Source: Octopus bimaculoides | Lineage: Eukaryota | NCBI RefSeq assembly: GCF_001194135.2 | Contig: NC_068984.1 | Span: 34,297,552 to 34,361,551 of the forward strand | Reading direction: 5' to 3' | DNA length: 64,000 nt | Part shown: positions 19,610 to 60,562 of the stretch, piece by piece | How positions within the stretch are numbered: the stretch's first letter is position 1 | Layout: the number at the start of each line of letters is the position of its first letter | Notes under the pieces: generated by a model | What the model was told of the DNA's origin: nothing | What the model saw: only the letters and a program-made list of their open reading frames with translations | Databases searched by the model: none | Program-made: the position numbers and the translations under genes

Positions 19610-19927
19610 TCTTTTATTCTTTTCTCTAATTTCTATATTTGTTTCAGTGGTTTGACTGTGGCTGTGCTGGAGAACCGCCTTCAGTCGGACAGATCGAACC
19701 CTAATAATTATTCTAACGGTATCTCTTGCCGAACTGCTAACTTACGGAGACGTAAACACACCAACATCAGCTATCAAGCGATGATGGGAGGACAAACTCA
19801 GACACTACACATATATATATATATATAGACGAAGGGATTCTTCCAGTCTCTATTCGAAGTTACCACGCAGTGGAAGTGAACCCGGAGCCATGTGGTTAGG
19901 AAGCAAGCTTCTTACCTCACAGCCGCG
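19610..19927 (-). mobile_element. Composite tRNA-derived SINE, internally deleted, inverted
   Basis: Reverse complement of the head (GAACCCGGAGCCATGTGGTTAGGAAGCAAGCTTCTTACC) and tail (TTTGTTTCAGTGGTTTGACTGTGGCTGTGCTGGAGAACCGCC) of the 10828-11311 family. Confidence 0.75.
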
Positions 19928-25220: not shown

Positions 25221-25437
25221 GCGCCGAGCTGGCAGAATGTCTAGGACGGCTGCGAAAGTAATTAGCGGCACTCTGTCTATGTCTTTACGTTCCGAGTCCA
25301 AATCTCACCGTTGTCGACTTTGCCTTTCATCGTTTCGGGTTCGATAAAATAAAGAGCAGCTGAGCACTGGTGTCAATGCAATCGATTTATTTCCTTTCAC
25401 AAAATTACTGGTCTTGTGCCAAAATTTGAAGCCAATA
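25221..25437 (+). mobile_element. tRNA-derived SINE (second family), diverged
   Basis: GAGCTGGCAGAATG...GAGTCCAAATCTC...GTCGACTTTGCCTTTCATC...GGTCTTGTGCCAAAATTTGAA, collinear with 35518-35728. Confidence 0.75.
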
Positions 25438-39638: not shown

Positions 39639-40212
39639 CACCTCCAAATCCAGTTCAAATTTTAGACGCACACACATCCTGTCCACTGAAGATAAGCGTA
39701 ATGGCTCGTAATTCGTAAATTCTTGCTAGTGGGTTTCTGATTTAGGTACCAAGCCAATAATTTCGAAGGGGAAAGCTCAGTGGATACTGTTGTTTCTCGT
39801 GCGTAACTGGTGCTTTATTTTATTGCTACCGAAATGATGAAGTAAGAAGCTGACCCCAGCAGGGTTTGAATTCAGTACATAAAGTGATGGTAGAGTGTAA
39901 AAATGATAGTAGCTGTAGTCATATTGATCTTATTAATAGTATTGATGTTACTCTTTAATCTCAGTTAACCCTCATTAACCTAAGATCAAATACATTTCAT
40001 TCAGCTTTTAAAATACACTCGGGTCCCACATATATCTCATGTCATTGGCTCTTATCTTCAATAAAGTCGCTTATCTTGTTCATGCTATTGTTGTTGTTGT
40101 TGTTGTCATGTACGAATTGGTTGGTTGCTAAGGGCGTGACAGTGCTCGTTTGTATGTAGATGGTAGCTATATTAATTCCGATGATACAAAAGTGATAATG
40201 AAAATTCATTTA

Positions 40213-40796
40213 TAGAAATATTAATATTTCTAAGTCTCTCGAAAGGAGACTACGGCAGCGGTACTGGATATTAATAGTTATCGTCAAGCCAGCATGGCAG
40301 TCCAAAATAAATAGGACCAATGCTGCGGTTGATTAGCTCCAAGAGGCCATCGCCTCTAGCTAGCTATGTGACACACGAATTTGTGTTCTTTATAACCTTC
40401 TGTCCATTATAACCATGTTGGCTTGCCGATAACTATTAATATCCAGTACCGCTGCCGTAGTCTTCTTTGGAGAGACTTAGAAATATTAATATTTCTACTT
40501 TTGAAAACCAGTGGATGTATTCCACTGAATTTAGGTAAATAACCCTTCGTACAGACGGTCAGTAGCGACGCCTGCTGGGTTCGGCTGCTCTACATTGATA
40601 AGACACAATACCACGAAACTAGTCTGTAGATGCCAGACCAGCAAGGGGAAGCCGCTGACCTCTCCTGTTCGAAGGTTATAATGGACACAAATTCGTGTGT
40701 CTCATAGCTAGCTAGAGGCGATGGCTTCTTGGAGCTAATCAACGGCAGCATTCGTCCTACTTTTTGGACTGCCATGTTGACTGGGTGATAACTATT
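40213..40796. mobile_element. Retrozyme/Penelope-pLTR-like insertion: permuted 359-nt monomer plus inverted partial copy, 12-bp TSD
   Basis: AAAATTCATTTA at 40201-40212 and 40797-40808. 40413-40439 recurs at 40772-40798 (period 359). 40213-40297 is the inverse of 40413-40497 and 40271-40400 the inverse of 40671-40798. Contains an HHR fold. Confidence 0.8.
40574..40642 (+). ncRNA. Type I hammerhead ribozyme fold, core degenerate in this copy
   Basis: TCTACA (stem I) TTGATAA (CUGAUGA with two transitions) GACACAATACCAC (stem/loop II) GAAAC TA GTC | TGTAGA (stem I partner). Stem III is palindromic (ACTAGT). Stem I extends through a TGC bulge to GGC/GCC and GCTGG/CCAGC. Confidence 0.7.
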
Positions 40797-42160
40797 AAAA
40801 TTCATTTACATATATATGTATGTGAATATGTGTGTGTATATGTATGTATGCATGTGTACACGCACGCGCACACACTTTCTTCAGATTGTGGGTGATTGGA
40901 AGCACTAATGAGTCGGGACTGCAATGCTTATTGATACTGTCGGACAGGATGATATATGTGTGTGTGTGTGTGCGTGTGTGTAGTGTGTGTGCTTGTGTTT
41001 GTGTGTGTGTGTTTGTGTGTGTGTGTGTTAGTGTGTGTGACACCATTTTATAAAAATATTTTGTAAGTGTCGAATGTGTTTGGTATTTTGCAGATAAGAA
41101 AGTAAATTTTGAACGCAATAAAGCTGTAATAACAACAGAACAAGAGTGAGTGTTTACTCGTATAAAACGAAAAACAGTTGCCACAAGGCAACTACGAAAT
41201 TAACGTTCTTGCCTGCAGTGCTCCAGCCTGGCCGCAGTCAATTGAATAAAACAATTAAGTCTTGTCAGTAAACAGGTCGTGGTTTGAAAGCGACGAAAAT
41301 ATGTTGACACAAATTAAATTTGGATGTTAAAGTGAATCTCACGGTTTTTGTGTTTTTAAATGGATTATAAACACCTTCCACGCTGCAAACGATTTTGTAT
41401 ATATAATATAATATAATATAATATAATATAATATAATATATATATNNNNNNNNNNNNNNNNNNNNNNNNNNNNNNNNNNNNNNNNNNNNNNNNNNNNNNN
41501 NNNNNNNNNNNNNNNNNNNNNNNNNNNNNNNNNNNNNNNNNNNNNNNNNNNNNNNNNNNNNNNNNNNNNNNNNNNNNNNNNNNNNNNNNNNNNNNNNNNN
41601 NNNNNNNNNNNNNNNNNNNNNNNNNNNNNNNNNNNNNNNNNNNNNNNNNNNNNNNNNNNNNNNNNNNNNNNNNNNNNNNNNNNNNNNNNNNNNNNNNNNN
41701 NNNNNNNNNNNNNNNNNNNNNNNNNNNNNNNNNNNNNNNNNNNNNNNNNNNNNNNNNNNNNNNNNNNNNNNNNNNNNNNNNNNNNNNNNNNNNNNNNNNN
41801 NNNNNNNNNNNNNNNNNNNNNNNNNNNNNNNNNNNNNNNNNNNNNNNNNNNNNNNNNNNNNNNNNNNNNNNNNNNNNNNNNNNNNNNNNNNNNNNNNNNN
41901 NNNNNNNNNNNNNNNNNNNNNNNNNNNNNNNNNNNNNNNNNNNNNNNNNNNNNNNNNNNNNNNNNNNNNNNNNNNNNNNNNNNNNNNNNNNNNNNNNNNN
42001 NNNNNNNNNNNNNNNNNNNNNNNNNNNNNNNNNNNNNNNNNNNNNNNNNNNNNNNNNNNNNNNNNNNNNNNNNNNNNNNNNNNNNNNNNNNNNNNNNNNN
42101 NNNNNNNNNNNNNNNNNNNNNNNNNNNNNNNNNNNNNNNNNNNNNNNNNNNNNNNNNNNN

Positions 42161-43806: not shown

Positions 43807-44085
43807 TATGCTTCAAAATTTCTGGCACAAAGGTTAGAGGTGAAACTTTCGGATCGTCGCAAGACGCACTGCAGCGACGGCGTGTGGCAAGCACGTTTTC
43901 CTTGATCAAGAGAGAAGTTAAGGAGTCTATTACATTGAACCCAGTGCTCAGTTTGTACTTAGTTTATTGACCCAGAAACAGTGAAAGGCAAAGTTGGACT
44001 CAGTGGAATTTGAACTCAGGAATGTAAGGAGCTGATAGAAAAGCCTGATAAGCACTGTATCCGACGTGCTAACGATTCCTCCACA
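43805..44085 (-). mobile_element. Inverted SINE copy or copies between (TAT)n and (AAT)n tracts
   Basis: GGCAAAGTTGGACTCAGTGGAATTTGAACTCAG...CCGACGTGCTAACGATTC is the reverse complement of the second SINE family. Confidence 0.7.
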
Positions 44086-47000
44086 TAATAATAATAATAA
44101 TAATAATATAGCTCATTCTGATGTAGAATTAGAATCGCAGCAAAATCACATACAAAAATCACTACTTTACACACACGCACGCACGCACACAGACATGCAC
44201 ACCCTCATAAAGATATGGGTGTGAATGTATATATGTGTGTTTGTCTGTGTTTGTGTGAAAGACAGTGCATAACGGTGTGTGCGCATGCAGTGATTGTAGT
44301 GGTGGTGGTGGTGGTGGTGGTAGAAATGATGTGTGTAATAAAAGACACTTCGGTATCACTCTGAAGATGCAATACGGTAATCATGCTGAAATAAAGATAG
44401 GAACAAGAGAAGATAAGTTTTGTACATGGCTCCAAGATGTCTGCAATGAAATGAGATGATAAGCTGCTTCCATGTTTTACATTGAATTTAGATTACAAAG
44501 GAAGGACTCATTTCAAAGTCTACGCAAGAAGAAGAATTTTAGGTTTTTATTCATTTTATGTCGCCAATTCAGAGGAAGACGGACAGCGCCCACTTAATAC
44601 ATTTCAGGTTTTCGGGGTTTGGCGGGAGAAAGGGTGTAATATGCCCTTACACCTGAAACTGGGCAAGGATGTTTGCGACAGTTTGAGCATAGCTAGAGAT
44701 GCACCGAAGAACCAGATGGTTGTGGGGTTATTTTGTGAGCTTAGTGTCAAACGATTAGCATATGTAATCTCTAAGAGAGGTAGATCTAATTTGTACGCAC
44801 ACAAATACTTTTGCACATGCACACACACATATATATATACACACACCTATGTATACAGATACCTTTTTATCTTCAAAGCTGCACCATTCTGGAACGCCTA
44901 CTTAGCATGTTTTTTCTCACATCTCTGGATAAATATCTGTTGAGCATCAATCAGAACTAACTGCACCAGTCCTACAAATGTTTTCAACACTCCCTCACAC
45001 TGCACGCTATTACAAGTAAACAGACCAAGGAATCACTAGTTTAATTCAACAGAATATATGTTTCGATCTCACTACTCAAATTGTTACACACTTTCTATGT
45101 TTTACCTCATTGTTAGTGAAAGGGGGTGTAAATGATTTCGGCGGTGGCTTTATGTCCTTATTACTTTCGGAACAGTAAAGATACTACAAAATCATGTATT
45201 CCTGTTACACAATGAGGACGTTATAGATTACTGGTCTCCAAAGTTCCTGTGATACCTTCAGCCTATCTATCCAACCCTAAGTTATGCAAAACCGTTGTTT
45301 TACTCCATTAGCAAAACTTTAACCTCAAAGAAAATCTCACGACATTCCTAAACACTATCTATAACATTTTAGAGCGCCTAGACACTCCGAGTAGTAACCA
45401 CTGTTATACGGATTTAGGCGTCATCAGATTAATTCGCTTTTGAATGAAATAATAGGCAAGCGACAACACAGTCCATATCGGTCAAATTAAGAAACATGAA
45501 CAGTTTCTTAAAAACCTAAACTGAGGTATGCGTTCTTTTTGAGATGAGAGTAGAGATGAGTTTTTGTGTTTCGAAGAACAAAAAAATATAAAAACGATTA
45601 AAAATTAATGACAGAGTTGTTCTTTCTCTTTCTCCCTTTTCCTTAACTCTCTCCATTTTTCTGCCTACGGGTCTATACTTTAATGTCTGTACCGTTGATT
45701 GCCTATGAGTTTTCCGTTGGGTATTACAATCTACGGTATATCAGTCGCATTACAATCTACGGTATATCAAAGAAGCAACTGCAAATGCTCTTCTAAGACA
45801 AGAGCGCTGTTAATGAGGACGAATGAATGGCTTCAAGAAGTGAATAAAGGCGTCTCTAACAGATTTTAAAATTGTGATTGATTCCTAGGAGTTGCTTGCA
45901 CAAGTATATTCTCACTTTGCCGCAATATATGAAAGCAAAAGACCTGCTACAAATGAAAATCCCAAAAGCTTGAGATACCTGTGCAGCAGTGCCGCACATG
46001 TCTGTAGTACCTTACACGCGGGATAGGATGTTTTGCTCAGGCAGGCCTCATTAGTCTGCTGGCACCTCTCCTGGCCCAGCAGACTAGTCTAGACAAGATA
46101 TAGAAGCCAATTCTGCGGCTTGACTATTTTTGATAAAGGTAAGCGAACAACGTACATATTTAAGTAAGTACCTTGCAAATACTGTACTACACAATAACAA
46201 CTTTTGCTAGCCAAAGCGACAATGCTTCCTTGTTTGAATCTAAGCAGGACTGGGCATTATTCCCGAGGGTGAGTAGATGTGTGTATCTATGTATATATAT
46301 GTGTATGCGTATAAGCATGGATGTGTTTGTATATTTTTCAGTGACACTCATACATCCCGGTAGAACCAACCATCTAATCAAATACCTCTATATAGCAGAC
46401 ATTAGGAAGTAATTGATCTACAGGTTCGGACCTTACGTTGTTAGTTTCTTTCGTAATGTAAACGTGTCCATTATAAATGATTTGCTCTTAATATAGTGTG
46501 ATGTGTTAATCTAGCTATCAGGAGTAACTTAGGCAAACTCTCCTGCAATTCAAATGCGACTCATCTGTTGAAAGCTAAATTTCGCATTCAATGCACTGGA
46601 GATCCTATCTATTGAGATTTTTGACTCGTGAAAAGCAAAACTGATTTAAAGTCAGCATCTGAAGAATAAAAAATAATCTGCCAGGGAGCTGTATCAGCAA
46701 CCTGGTTTCAATTCCCCTTTGTAGTCACTGCCCTGCACTTAAGTTGTTATTGTGCTGGTGATAAGGGATTAGGGTTGCATGTTGAATGATTGATGTATTT
46801 TTCAGTTAAATCGTTTATCACATTTAAACATACACGTGAATACAGTTATCAACACATATGTACGTAAAGGTATATACTTTCAGATTATTGTGCGTGCGAT
46901 GTGTATATACATACGTATACTCACACACACGCACCCACACACACACTCACACACACACACACACACATACATATGTATTTATGTATATATAGCTATATAC

Positions 47001-50322: not shown

Positions 50323-50540
50323 AAGGCAGCGAGCAGGCAGAATCGTTAACGCGCTGGACGAAATGCTTAGCGGTATTTCGCCCGTCGCTACGTTCTGAGT
50401 TCAAATTCCGCCGAGGCCGATTTTGCTTTTCATCCTTTCGGGGACGATAAAATGAGTTCCAGTCGAAAACTGGGGTCAATGTGATCGACTTGTCCCCTCC
50501 CGGGAAATTGCTGCCATTGTGGCAAAATTGGAAACCGTTA
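50323..50540 (+). mobile_element. tRNA-derived SINE (second family), well preserved
   Basis: AGGCAGCGAGCAGGCAGAATCGTTAACGCGCTGGACGAAATGCTTAGCGGTATTTCG...GAGTTCAAATTCCGCCGAGG. TGTTATTGTTCTCAACAGA-like sequence occurs on both sides (about 50305-50322 and 50537-50554), a possible TSD. Confidence 0.9.
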
Positions 50541-53636: not shown

Positions 53637-54009
53637 TGTTTTATCGACCTAGGAAGGATTAAATACAAAGTTTAACTCGATTGGAATTGAACTTGAAATA
53701 TAAACATCGGGAAAAAAGACCACAATATATTTTTTCTGATGCTCTATCGATTCTGACAACTCATCTATAATAATAATAAGAATCTTTTCTACTATAGGCA
53801 GCCCAAGGTCTGACATTTTGGGGGAGAGACCTACTCGAGTACAGTAACCATTGTACCCAACTCAAATTTATCTTATTGCCCAGCAAAACGATGACAAACA
53901 AAGTTGACTTTGGCGCAATTTTCTGAGCGGACAACTCAGAACTTAAAGAGAGACGAAATGCTGCGAACTATTTTGTCCGGTTTGCTAATGATTGTGGAAG
54001 CTCGCCGCC

Positions 54010-54049
<40 letters not shown>

Positions 54050-54492: not shown

Positions 54493-56866
54493 CAATAACA
54501 ACAAGAGCAACAATAATACAAATCTGAACCTACTTAAAATATATTGAATGTTCATTCCGTAAATAATGAATAAAATACACAATGCGGCCATGAATAAATT
54601 CATAAATTCATTAAGGTGGAAAATAATATCGCGTGAATTTGAAGCAAACTTCTAAAACATCTTCAATTTTTTGAAACAATTGATGAGAAGTTAATTATGC
54701 TTGAAACTTATTTCAGCAAAGATCTGGCTGGAAAATATATATTCCGAATTTTTAGAAAATCATGTGCATGGGATAAATAATTAGCCATGTATAATAATAT
54801 CTGATACTGCATAATATGCTTGTTTATTTTGGATGAGTGGGCACAATATCGTTTTACACACTGTAAGATAAAACTCCAACTCCAAGAAACCTAGCATATA
54901 ATTGTTGTTTCAAAGGCAGGGGATATAAACATGTTTCTAGAAAAATTTATTATGGAAATAGATTTTAATGTATCTTGCATATAGAAGTAACTGGTATTAT
55001 TATTTACTGAAAAGAAGAAAAAAATAACAACAATAATTTGGTTTATTACCACTCTATAAGATGTGTTATTGATTTCTAGTTTCAAGACGATGCCACGAAT
55101 TTAGAGGGAGCTAACCACAAAGATGTAAGACAAAACAGAAAGAAAAAAAAAACAATACTTGAGAGGAATTTAATTTCCGAATATTAAGGGTCGTAACTAA
55201 ATACCGTGAGCCATTTTGTATTGCATTTAACCTATCCTGTCAAACCAAAGTTGCTGTTATATATATTACCATAATAGCAAACCTAACAATGTCATTCTTA
55301 CCGAGCAATATCAATAGTCTATGACGTAAGGATAAAAAGCGAAGACGACCTTAGTGATATTGTAACTCAGAAGGTGAGAGCATGATTGAACACCAGTAGC
55401 CATTTTGCTCAACTCAATCTATCAAGCCGATATTTTTCTTGGAAAGAATATCTTTAAAACAGAGAATATACACTCAGGGATGACTGTGATTAAAACGCAA
55501 CTACGTGGTTTTGGTTCAGTCCCACTGCGTGGCAACTTGGTTAAGTGACTTCTACTACAGCCACAGACCAATTAATGCCTTGTGAAGGAATTTGTTAGAC
55601 GGAAGCTTAGATAGAAGTTCGATAGAACCCCGTAATATGTGTGTGCGTGCATCCTTAATAGATCAGTGTTATACTACTTGTTAAGAGCCATACCAATCAG
55701 TATATATATATATATATATATNNNNNNNNNNNNNNNNNNNNNNNNNNNNNNNNNNNNNNNNNNNNNNNNNNNNNNNNNNNNNNNNNNNNNNNNNNNNNNN
55801 NNNNNNNNNNNNNNNNNNNNNNNNNNNNNNNNNNNNNNNNNNNNNNNNNNNNNNNNNNNNNNNNNNNNNNNNNNNNNNNNNNNNNNNNNNNNNNNNNNNN
55901 NNNNNNNNNNNNNNNNNNNNNNNNNNNNNNNNNNNNNNNNNNNNNNNNATATATATATATATATACATACTGTTTAATATTCTTAATAGGCAGTACAGCA
56001 CTGATCTGTTAAGGGAGTAAAAGATAATATTATAATAAAACCCACAAAAAGTCTTGCGAACTACAGCTACCCATGGTCTCCTGGTCGAAATATCAATAAT
56101 AATGATCAATTTATTTCGCCATTTATGAAACTGGTAAAAACTGGAAAAGCTTTTAGTAACTGAGTTCGACGCAATTGATATTAGAATGAGACATATTTTG
56201 GTGAATATGAAGATGTGATGCTTATTTCTTCCCATAGACCAGTATCACTGGAAGAGAACTGAACTAGCTTCGATTAGGAAATGCTAACAACATGTCGCTC
56301 TCGACTTCAAGGCAGCTTGCTGACTGCTGGCAATTTCATCGTCGGTATGATTATCAATGGAATACTATAGATGAAATGACTAATGACACAGAGCCAACGA
56401 GGGAAATTCTGTTGTTTCTTTAACCTGCTAGAAATAGCTTCACAATCTGTCTCAAATTTCAGACAACTGTACGAAATGGGAAAAGTATAAATTGAGCAAT
56501 ACAGTCCCAAGCATACGTCTTCAAGATGAGACAGTCACGTTAGAAACACCTTTGGTTATGCGTCAACTTGATCAAGAACACCGTATGGTTAAACAACAAA
56601 AGCAATGCATAGCAAACAATGGAAAGAGAAAGAAAAACAATTAATTATTGTGCTTTGGAAGTTACACGATCAGTCGGTGATATAAATCATTATTACCTCC
56701 CGAAACCAGCCATGTTGAACAAAACTCAGAGTAATTCAGGCAAAAGAATAACTCGGGTAGAATTTGTCTTTAGTATTTTTACATCAAATAACCATTTGAA
56801 CATTTTGCAGTAGTCTCACTGTTTATATTGGTAGACTGCAACTGCCACTGATATTTTGTTTTACAG

Positions 56867-60379: not shown

Positions 60380-60562
60380 CGATTCATATCTGCACTCGGT
60401 CTGCTTACGAGGTTGTTTTTTACTGCTACATAATTTATGGATCCCAGAAGGATGAAATACAAAGTCCACCTCGGCGGAATTTAAATTCAGAATGTAGCGA
60501 CGGGCGAAATACCGCTAAGCATTTCGTCCAACGTGCTAACGATTCTGCCAGGTCGCAGCCTT
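60380..60562 (-). mobile_element. tRNA-derived SINE (second family)
   Basis: AAAGTCCACCTCGGCGGAATTTAAATTCAGAATGTAGCGACGGGCGAAATACCGCTAAGCATTTCGTCCAACGTGCTAACGATTCTGCCAG, followed by (AAT)n. Confidence 0.85.

What the first reader, a model, noticed from the sequence alone, without database searches (positions are those of the whole stretch)
40201..40808. TSD-flanked retrozyme-like element: circularly permuted 359-nt monomer with a hammerhead, plus an inverted partial copy
Seen: an exact 12-bp direct repeat (AAAATTCATTTA) brackets 584 bp, so the block looks like one insertion. Inside, the plus-strand run 40413-40798 is about 1.07 copies of a 359-nt unit; its last 27 nt repeat its first 27 with 4 mismatches. 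The inverted copy 40213-40400 reads continuously across that permutation point, so the template was tandem or circular. The unit has no ORF but contains a type I HHR fold and a perfect 20-bp palindrome (TAGAAATATTAATATTTCTA). Established: metazoan non-LTR retrozymes are small non-coding tandem monomers of a few hundred nt, each with a type I HHR; they give circular RNAs (reported in coral, mussel and axolotl) and are related to Penelope-like pLTRs. Inference: this is a cephalopod retrozyme family copied from a circular or multimeric RNA.
Basis: partly seen in the sequence, partly recalled or inferred. Interest (0 to 1): 0.85.

Follow-up and report, generated by a model that had tools for sequence, protein, structure and literature searches.

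The report
Small retro-inserted RNA element with hammerhead-like relic
A 584-bp insertion flanked by a 12-bp target duplication was copied from a repeating 359-nt non-coding RNA in the tandem-plus-inverted pattern typical of Penelope-like retroelements, and its hammerhead-ribozyme look-alike lacks one of the three helices, so it is at best a decayed relative of known animal "retrozymes".

Summary
An exact 12-bp direct repeat (40201 and 40797; chance about 1e-4 to 2e-4) brackets three parts. The first is an inverted partial copy (40213-40400), which equals unit positions 259-359 followed by 1-85 at 93% identity. The second is a 12-nt filler. The third is 1.07 direct copies of a 359-nt unit (40413-40798). 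The unit is non-coding, has 45% GC and folds far better than shuffles (z = -6.5).

The hammerhead claim holds only in part. There is no CUGANGA on either strand and no Rfam hit. A covariance model built only from coral, mussel and axolotl retrozyme hammerheads nevertheless ranks 40588-40631 (+) first in the whole window (18.8 bits, E about 0.004). The site has:
- a 6-bp helix I
- a UUGAUAA core, the U3-A8 covariant documented in Penelope-like elements
- G10.1-C11.1
- GAAAC-UA-GUC with a palindromic helix III
- no helix II

The layout (partial tandem plus an abutting inverted 5'-truncated copy, both 3' ends facing outward, AT-rich target beside a TA/TG microsatellite) matches Penelope-like insertion by priming on both strands.

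I could not test copy number, the family consensus, an empty site or circular RNA, because no animal genome collection was available. Verdict: a retrozyme-like, Penelope-type non-autonomous insertion. Membership of the retrozyme family is not shown. Interest is moderate to low.

The parts
40201..40212 (.). Left target-site duplication, AAAATTCATTTA. Inferred top-strand nick after 40212 (TCATTTA|CATATATA in the pre-insertion site).
40213..40400 (-). Inverted, 5'-truncated partial copy: reverse complement of unit 259-359 followed by 1-85. Its 3' end (unit position 85, the end of the palindrome) abuts the left TSD.
   Evidence: 175/188 identical, one 2-nt indel
40213..40232 (.). Perfect 20-bp palindrome TAGAAATATTAATATTTCTA (copy in the inverted arm)
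40401..40414 (-). Junction filler between the inverted and direct copies. It is an exact re-copy of the reverse complement of unit 262-275 (GGTTATAATGGACA) and shares CC with the start of the direct copy. Read as a template-switch or microhomology join.
   Evidence: (I5)
40413..40771 (+). One complete 359-nt unit: 45% GC, non-coding, RNA fold -126.5 kcal/mol against -92.6 +/- 5.2 for shuffles
40478..40497 (.). Perfect 20-bp palindrome (copy in the direct unit). It is preceded by a 5-6-bp hairpin, AGTCT..AGACT.
40539..40679 (+). Long imperfect hairpin of the unit. The hammerhead-like motif forms its tip.
40588..40631 (+). Hammerhead-like motif. Helix I is 40589-94 paired with 40625-30 (UCUACA/UGUAGA). 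The core U3-A9 is 40595-40601 (UUGAUAA). G10.1 is 40602 and C11.1 is 40614. GAAA is 40615-18. Helix III is AC-UA-GU at 40618-23 (palindrome ACUAGU). C17 is 40624, so the predicted cleavage lies at 40624/40625. Helix II is absent.
   Evidence: top hit of the window, 18.8 bits, E 0.004; negative Rfam
40772..40798 (+). Restart of the unit (positions 1-27, 4 mismatches). Weaker homology continues to 40804, inside the TSD.
   Evidence: (D2)
40797..40808 (.). Right target-site duplication. Inferred bottom-strand nick at the TSD's left edge in the pre-insertion site (GAATTTT|CATTATCA on the bottom strand).
40809..40887 (.). TA/TG-rich microsatellite-like DNA directly 3' of the insertion: the target context, not part of the element
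   Evidence: D1; spurious mir-297/466 hits

Best explanation
The block is one old retrotransposition event.

Template. It was a small (359-nt period), non-coding, strongly folded RNA of + polarity, present as a multimer: either a read-through transcript of a tandem array or a circle copied more than once round.

Insertion steps (inferred):
- A Penelope-like RT/endonuclease nicked an AT-rich site beside a TA/TG microsatellite on both strands, 12 bp apart, at similar sequences (ATTTW|CAT).
- Each freed 3'-OH primed cDNA synthesis at an internal site in the AU-rich hairpin region of the RNA.
- The bottom-strand primer started near unit position 27-33, with 6/8 microhomology, and copied 1.07 units.
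- The top-strand primer started at position 85, without homology, and copied 186 nt.
- The two inward-facing 5'-truncated cDNAs were joined by a short template switch (a 14-nt re-copy with CC microhomology).
- Gap repair produced the 12-bp TSD.

Ribozyme-like motif. The unit carries, on the same strand as the inferred RNA and at the tip of its longest hairpin, a motif that matches retrozyme and PLE type I hammerheads in helix I, core (U3-A8 covariant), G10.1-C11.1, GAAA, a short palindromic helix III and a GUC site. It has no helix II. In this copy it is most likely a catalytically dead relic of a hammerhead.

In function it is a retrozyme-like, non-autonomous passenger of Penelope-like elements. 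At this locus it is an inert insertion.

Shown: the repeat geometry, TSD, junctions, RNA fold and motif statistics. Inferred: the enzyme, priming on both strands, the polarity and the ribozyme ancestry.
For: - TSD far beyond chance.
- The unit junction is seen independently in the direct and the inverted copy.
- Both copies have their 3' ends facing the TSDs and their truncated 5' ends facing inward. This is the geometry expected if both nicked strands prime on a + sense RNA.
- Published PLE behaviour matches: partial tandems plus an adjacent inverted 5'-truncated copy, variable TSD and microsatellite bias (PMC8557442).
- A purified PLE protein cleaves and extends both strands, prefers ATT in AT-rich DNA, and starts reverse transcription at two adjacent internal RNA sites that are not homologous to the target. 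Its hammerhead is dispensable for insertion in vitro (PMC11167929).
- Non-LTR retrozymes are reported as PLE derivatives (bioRxiv 10.64898/2026.07.22.740005).
- A covariance model made only from coral, mussel and axolotl retrozyme hammerheads puts 40588-40631 (+) first among all sites of the 64-kb window on both strands (18.8 bits, E about 0.004).
- A relaxed descriptor hits 0.15% of dinucleotide shuffles of the unit.
- The U3-A8 core variant is documented in Schistosoma PLE hammerheads (PMC4209133).
- A 1-2-bp helix III with a 2-4-nt palindromic loop is the metazoan type I norm. GAAAC-AU-GUC occurs in the axolotl Ax330 retrozyme.
- The spacing of 13 nt between A9 and G12 equals that of the coral, mussel and Ax353 ribozymes.
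- The fold has z = -6.5 on the + strand.
- There is no coding signal.
Against: - Helix II, a defining part of every hammerhead, is missing. Restoring 3-4 bp would take at least 2-3 substitutions.
- Rfam hammerhead models give nothing. This is a weak negative, because the E-values are multiplied by 4227 families.
- My descriptors were written after seeing the site. In the AT-rich window the relaxed descriptor finds 3 other hits in about 118 kb.
- There is only one locus, so no family, consensus, tandem array, empty site, autonomous PLE partner or RNA data could be examined.
- The gap between the two 3' ends (52-58 nt) is longer than the published 30-40-bp PLE 'tail'.
- The host was not identified.
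- The - strand RNA also folds well (z = -5.3), so structure alone does not fix the polarity.
Confidence: 0.5

Rival explanations
1. The insertion mechanism is the same (PLE-type retro-insertion of a small non-autonomous unit), but the hammerhead-like motif is coincidental. The unit never carried a ribozyme, as in Naiad and Chlamys PLEs and their non-autonomous derivatives, which lack canonical hammerheads.
For: There is no helix II, no CUGANGA and no Rfam hit. Hammerhead-less PLE clades and non-autonomous derivatives that form pLTRs and head-to-tail copies exist, and Naiad remnants are reported in cephalopods. Three other relaxed-descriptor hits lie in the window.
Against: The best hit in the window of an independent retrozyme-hammerhead model falls inside this 359-nt unit, on the inferred RNA strand, at E about 0.004. 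The two core differences are exactly the known covarying pair U3-A8. All segment lengths match canonical type I ribozymes.
Confidence: 0.2
2. A LINE (non-PLE) reverse transcriptase copied a satellite or tandem-repeat transcript in trans, and 'twin priming' produced the inverted 5' segment.
For: A 12-bp TSD and 5' inversion with a duplicated or deleted junction are classic for L1-type TPRT (established knowledge; not tested here). There is microhomology at the 3' junction.
Against: There is no poly(A) or simple-repeat 3' tail at 40790-40808. The two copies have different internal 3' ends rather than one defined 3' end. The partial tandem is not explained unless the transcript was itself tandem.
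Confidence: 0.12
3. A DNA-level event: a fragment of satellite or extrachromosomal circular DNA was captured at a staggered break, or replication template switching (FoSTeS/MMBIR-like) built the inverted-plus-direct arrangement without any RNA intermediate.
For: The joins are complex and use microhomology (the 14-nt re-copy and the CC overlap). No reverse-transcription hallmark such as an A-tail is present.
Against: The clean 12-bp TSD sits exactly at both homology boundaries. The outward-facing 3' ends and inward truncations fit TPRT. The strong RNA fold and the ribozyme-like motif have no role in this model.
Confidence: 0.08
4. An assembly artefact, or a DNA transposon, MITE or foldback element.
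For: The window is a gap-rich draft (4813 N). PLE-like structures are known to confuse short-read assemblies.
Against: The arms differ at 7% of positions, so they are not collapsed or duplicated reads. There are no terminal inverted repeats at the two ends of the block, since the inverted homology is internal and permuted. A 12-bp TSD is atypical for cut-and-paste families (established knowledge).
Confidence: 0.05

Closest known systems
Metazoan non-LTR retrozymes (Cervera & de la Pena 2020, PMC7229834; coral, mussel, axolotl)
   Same: A small non-coding monomer in the 150-450 nt range, GC at or below 45-50%, head-to-tail junctions, a TSD longer than 4 bp and a highly folded RNA. The type I hammerhead-like site has a 6-bp helix I, a short palindromic helix III and a GUC site, with the same segment lengths.
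   Different: Helix II is absent and the core is UUGAUAA, not CUGANGA. This locus holds only 1.07 direct copies plus an inverted fragment, not an array. No evidence on copy number or circular RNA could be obtained.
Penelope-like element insertions (pLTR partial tandem plus inverted 5'-truncated copy; PMC8557442, PMC11167929)
   Same: The architecture, a variable-length TSD, an AT-rich or microsatellite target, two different internal 3' ends, and a hammerhead-type motif in the repeated non-coding part. The U3-A8 core variant is known from Schistosoma Cercyon PLEs (PMC4209133).
   Different: There is no RT/GIY-YIG ORF, and the period is 359 nt instead of 3-4 kb. The offset between the 3' ends is 52-58 nt, against a 30-40-bp tail. 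Similarity to an autonomous PLE was not testable.
L1 5'-inverted insertions (twin priming)
   Same: A TSD of about 12 bp, an inverted 5' segment next to a direct 3' segment, and an overlap at the inversion junction.
   Different: There is no poly(A) tail, the template is tandem or permuted, and the joined ends include a short re-copied segment.

Membership tests
Metazoan non-LTR retrozyme | Small non-coding monomer (about 150-450 nt) | tested here: met
   The period is 359 nt. The longest stop-free stretch is 81 aa, with no Pfam match and no homologue.
Metazoan non-LTR retrozyme | Head-to-tail tandem copies (dimers to multimers) in the genome | tested here: inconclusive
   This locus holds only 1.07 direct copies. 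The unit junction is seen twice (direct and inverted copy), so the template was multimeric or circular. No genomic array was seen.
Metazoan non-LTR retrozyme | A complete type I hammerhead (CUGANGA / GAAA / UH, helices I-III) in each monomer | tested here: not met
   Helix I, the U3-A8 core, GAAA, helix III and GUC are present (18.8 bits, E 0.004). Helix II has only its closing pair. There is no CUGANGA and no Rfam hit.
Metazoan non-LTR retrozyme | Low GC (below 45-50%) and, when present, a TSD longer than 4 bp | tested here: met
   GC is 45.1%. The TSD is 12 bp. The criteria come from PMC7229834.
Metazoan non-LTR retrozyme | Multi-copy family expressed as small circular RNAs | not testable with these tools
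   There is no other copy in the 64-kb window. The collections searched hold no animal genomes: the only matches were 20-24-nt chance hits. No RNA data were available.
Penelope-like (PLE-type) insertion | Partial tandem (pseudo-LTR) with an inverted 5'-truncated copy abutting the 5' end | tested here: met
   compared with the description in PMC8557442.
Penelope-like (PLE-type) insertion | Variable-length TSD; AT-rich (ATT) cleavage sites; microsatellite-biased targets | tested here: met
   The TSD is 12 bp. The inferred nick contexts are TCATTTA|CAT and GAATTTT|CAT. A TA/TG microsatellite starts at 40809. This rests on a single event, so the support is descriptive only.
Penelope-like (PLE-type) insertion | Two alternative internal RT start sites giving a 30-40-bp 'tail' at one end | tested here: inconclusive
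   The 3' ends lie at unit positions 27-33 (direct copy) and 85 (inverted copy), which are 52-58 nt apart.
Penelope-like (PLE-type) insertion | RT plus GIY-YIG ORF, or sequence similarity to the termini of an autonomous PLE | not testable with these tools
   The unit has no ORF. The two window ORFs near 32 kb and the one at 44455-44940 that I scanned have no Pfam hit. No PLE library or host genome was available.
Type I hammerhead ribozyme | Conserved core with the C3-G8 pair (or its covariant), G12 A13 A14, A15.1-U16.1, and H17 | tested here: met
   The sequence is U3 U4 G5 A6 U7 A8 A9 ... G A A A ... U C17. U3-A8 is a documented natural covariant.
Type I hammerhead ribozyme | Helix II closing the three-way junction | tested here: not met
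   The 13 nt GACACAAUACCAC form only G10.1-C11.1. The custom model skips the helix as a local end.
Type I hammerhead ribozyme | Self-cleavage | not testable with these tools
   This needs in vitro transcription of monomer and dimer constructs.
L1-type twin-priming insertion | 3' poly(A) tail next to the downstream TSD | tested here: not met
   The 3' end reads ...GATAACTATTAA|AATTCATTTA, with no A-tract.

The most novel reading that the evidence does not exclude
The motif is not a relic but a working, helix II-less U3-A8 hammerhead. In this reading it is active only as a dimer through the ACUAGU palindrome, or with protein assistance as reported for the Anolis PLE ribozyme. It would define a cephalopod retrozyme family that makes 359-nt circular RNAs and is inserted by PLE machinery through priming on both strands.
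Probability: 0.05. Interest if true: 0.75.

Novelty: new member of a known kind. Interest (0 to 1): 0.35.

Why it matters
If the reading holds, this one locus records the insertion mechanics of a retrozyme-like RNA. It would show both target strands used as primers, internal initiation at two nearby sites, and a multimeric or circular template. That is structural evidence, complementary to the recent phylogenetic argument, that small hammerhead-bearing repeats of animals are passengers of Penelope-like elements. It would also add a mollusc lineage beyond mussels. The class, its ribozyme variants and the PLE insertion signature are all already published, and the ribozyme here is incomplete, so the gain is incremental.

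Tried and rejected
- Rfam over the whole window at gathering score, then at E<=10 on 801 nt and on 76 nt. No hammerhead or other ribozyme was found. The only hits near the block are spurious microsatellite 'miRNA' matches.
- Exact and 1-mismatch CUGANGA scans on both strands. The only result is an irrelevant UUGACGA on the - strand.
- Looking for other copies through spurious ORF translations in the 5.8-billion protein set. No shared words were found.
- Exact 20-mers from the two best-conserved stretches against metagenome, viral and prokaryote genome contigs. This gave zero hits or isolated 20-24-nt chance matches with no extended homology.
- Searching for a paralogous empty site by BLAST of the flanks within the window. 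None was found.
- tRNA-like (SINE) origin: ARAGORN found nothing.
- Coding origin: Pfam found nothing.
- Host identification by a protein search with a repeat-derived ORF. Nothing was found.
- A four-sequence hammerhead alignment was discarded because MAFFT misaligned the axolotl Ax330 core. The model was built from three sequences instead.
- Covariation between the two arms. Only one informative change was seen (U.G against C-G in the 40459-40477 hairpin), which is too little to use.
- Simple snap-back (hairpin-primed) synthesis was rejected, because the sequences at the inversion junction are not mirror images.
Full report
**1. What is in the sequence**

The window is AT-rich (33% GC) eukaryotic draft DNA, rich in microsatellites and gaps (4813 N). 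It carries one 5S rRNA-like gene. No tRNA was found.

- AAAATTCATTTA occurs only at 40201 and 40797.
- In this window, non-low-complexity identical 12-mers at 300-1000 bp spacing occur at 1.35e-6 per placement.
- About 150 placements are compatible with the homology edges. The chance of such a bracket is therefore roughly 2e-4, or 1e-4 from base composition.
- 40413-40771 is one 359-nt unit. 40772-40798 restarts it with 4 mismatches in 27 nt. Weaker homology runs on to 40804, inside the duplicated target (D2).
- The reverse complement of 40213-40400 aligns to unit 259-359 followed without interruption by 1-85 (175/188 identical, one 2-nt indel).

The junction 'end of unit to start of unit' is thus observed twice, once in each orientation. 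The template must have contained consecutive units.

The 20-bp palindrome is perfect in both copies.

Between the inverted and direct copies, 40401-40414 is an exact second copy of the reverse complement of unit 262-275. It shares CC with the first bases of the direct copy.

No other copy of the unit exists in the 64 kb (blastn with word size 7).

**2. Coding and structure**

The longest stop-free translation of a unit trimer is 81 aa. It has no Pfam match and shares no words with any protein in the large protein collection.

As RNA the unit folds to -126.5 kcal/mol, against -92.6 +/- 5.2 for dinucleotide shuffles (z = -6.5). The complementary strand gives z = -5.3.

The fold is branched, with 62-66% of bases paired even when circularised. 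It is dominated by a roughly 140-nt imperfect hairpin at 40539-40679.

G.U counts do not favour one strand.

**3. The hammerhead question**

The negative evidence is as follows.
- Neither strand has a CUGANGA.
- Rfam has no hammerhead hit at gathering score, nor at E<=10 on 801 nt or 76 nt.
- The Rfam result is a weak negative, because the reported E-values are multiplied by 4227 families.

UCUACA / UUGAUAA / G-ACACAAUACCA-C / GAAA-C-UA-G-U-C^ / UGUAGA

Compared with validated retrozyme ribozymes in the supplement of PMC7229834, every segment length is canonical:
- 6-7 nt for helix I
- a 7-nt core
- 13 nt where helix II and loop 2 lie
- GAAAC
- a short palindromic helix III (axolotl Ax330 has GAAAC-AU-GUC)
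- a GUC triplet

The two core differences from CUGAUGA are at positions 3 and 8, which pair with each other. U3-A8 in place of C3-G8 is a covariant reported in about 1,300 Schistosoma PLE-associated hammerheads (PMC4209133).

I built a covariance model from the coral, mussel and axolotl Ax353 ribozymes only. I then searched the whole window on both strands without filters.
- The top hit is 40588-40631 (+), at 18.8 bits and E about 0.004. The calibration is rough, so this could be off by about five-fold.
- The next hit is at 15.7 bits elsewhere.

A relaxed descriptor that does not require helix II gives these figures.
- It hits 0.15% of dinucleotide shuffles of the unit, and 0.05% if helix I must be 6 bp.
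- It finds three other sites in the roughly 118 kb of AT-rich window sequence. That gives about 2% per unit on this cruder, post-hoc measure.

Against this stands helix II. GACACAAUACCAC forms only the closing G10.1-C11.1 pair, and the model scores the site only by skipping that helix. By established hammerhead structure, the three-way junction cannot form as written.

My reading is a hammerhead-derived motif that is dead in this copy (about 50%), a coincidence (about 20-25%), or, least likely, an unrecognised working variant.

**4. How the insertion was made**

In the direct copy the 3' end faces the right TSD and the truncated 5' end faces inward. In the inverted copy the 3' end (unit position 85) faces the left TSD and its 5' end also faces inward.

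That is the geometry expected if both 3'-OH ends of a staggered break primed reverse transcription on an RNA of + polarity. This is the strand that carries the hammerhead-like motif.

The published properties of Penelope-like elements fit.
- Insertions are 5'-truncated and form partial tandems (pseudo-LTRs).
- TSDs vary in length and targets are biased to microsatellites (PMC8557442).
- A purified Anolis PLE protein cleaves and extends both strands and prefers ATT in AT-rich DNA.
- It starts reverse transcription at two adjacent internal RNA sites that are not homologous to the target.
- It uses multimeric transcripts, and insertion in vitro does not need hammerhead cleavage (PMC11167929).

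Here the inferred nick contexts are TCATTTA|CATATATA on the top strand and GAATTTT|CATTATCA on the bottom strand.
- The direct copy starts at unit 27-33, with 6/8 microhomology to the target.
- The inverted copy starts at position 85, without homology.
- A TA/TG microsatellite begins at 40809.

The offset of 52-58 nt between the two start sites resembles the 30-40-bp PLE 'tail' but is longer.

There is no poly(A) tail, which argues against L1-type twin priming.

The 7% divergence between the arms rules out a trivial assembly duplication. That divergence has a high share of transversions, and the 14-nt filler matches the direct copy exactly. The two cDNAs may therefore have copied different, already diverged monomers. 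Age cannot be read from this divergence, and a multimeric transcript is at least as likely as a single circle.

**5. Comparison with what is known**

In function the block resembles a non-LTR retrozyme, that is, a non-autonomous PLE derivative (PMC7229834; bioRxiv 10.64898/2026.07.22.740005).

Membership of the retrozyme family is not established, for three reasons.
- The defining complete type I hammerhead was tested and not met.
- Tandem arrays, copy number and circular RNA could not be tested.
- Scans of the protein, metagenome, viral and prokaryote collections returned nothing related.

The PLE-type insertion signature is met on the features that could be tested.

Hammerhead_1 loci (235) and Penelope elements are already reported in a cephalopod genome (PMC6962438). 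Even a confirmed cephalopod retrozyme would therefore be an expected addition. I could not verify that the window is cephalopod.

**6. Verdict**

- Observation: confirmed for all repeat features, partly for the ribozyme fold.
- Interpretation: partly supported.
- Best explanation (confidence about 0.5): a single PLE-type retro-insertion of a small, structured, non-coding multimeric RNA that carries a hammerhead relic without helix II.
- Novelty: a new member of a known kind, with membership still to be proven.
- Interest: about 0.35.

Noticed in passing
window 2194-2312 (+), with 2329-2499 and its repeats at 10828-10889, 11313-11444, 19857-19924, 35862-36003 and 55498-55607: A full-length 5S rRNA match (82.8 bits). 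The DNA just 3' of it recurs at five other places in the window at 77-95% identity. The 5S may therefore be the head of, or lie next to, an interspersed SINE-like repeat rather than a bona fide 5S gene.
   Followed up: partly
window 3447-3625, 3707-3875, 25225-25433, 35525-35688, 38551-38664, 38835-38888, 43924-44019, 50323-50536, 53933-54011, 60415-60562: An interspersed repeat of about 170-210 bp with at least 10 copies at 70-82% identity. Its spurious ORFs share the motif RPRRNLNSER.DGRNTAKHF. No homologue was found in the protein collection.
   Followed up: partly
window 8431-8477 (-) and around 60242 (-): Two other weak hammerhead-like sites. The first scores 15.7 bits (E 0.034) with the custom model but has a poor core (CUGAGGU, AAAA). 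The second has a strict CUGAUGA...GAAAC site with a 2-bp helix II and a G.U-rich helix I. Both look like chance matches.
   Followed up: no
window 40804-40887: Sub-threshold Rfam matches to mir-297, mir-466 and similar families are caused by the TA/TG microsatellite next to the insertion. They are false positives.
   Followed up: yes
window 40602-40611 and 40685-40694: The stretch where helix II should be (GACACAAUAC) resembles the 5' half of a nearby perfect hairpin of the unit (GACACAAAUUCGUGUGUC, 40685-40702). This could be an internal duplication or chance, and its meaning is unclear.
   Followed up: no
whole window: The window holds 4813 N in many gaps that are flanked by TA/TG/CA microsatellites. 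It is a short-read draft assembly in which complex tandem or inverted insertions could be under-represented.
   Followed up: no
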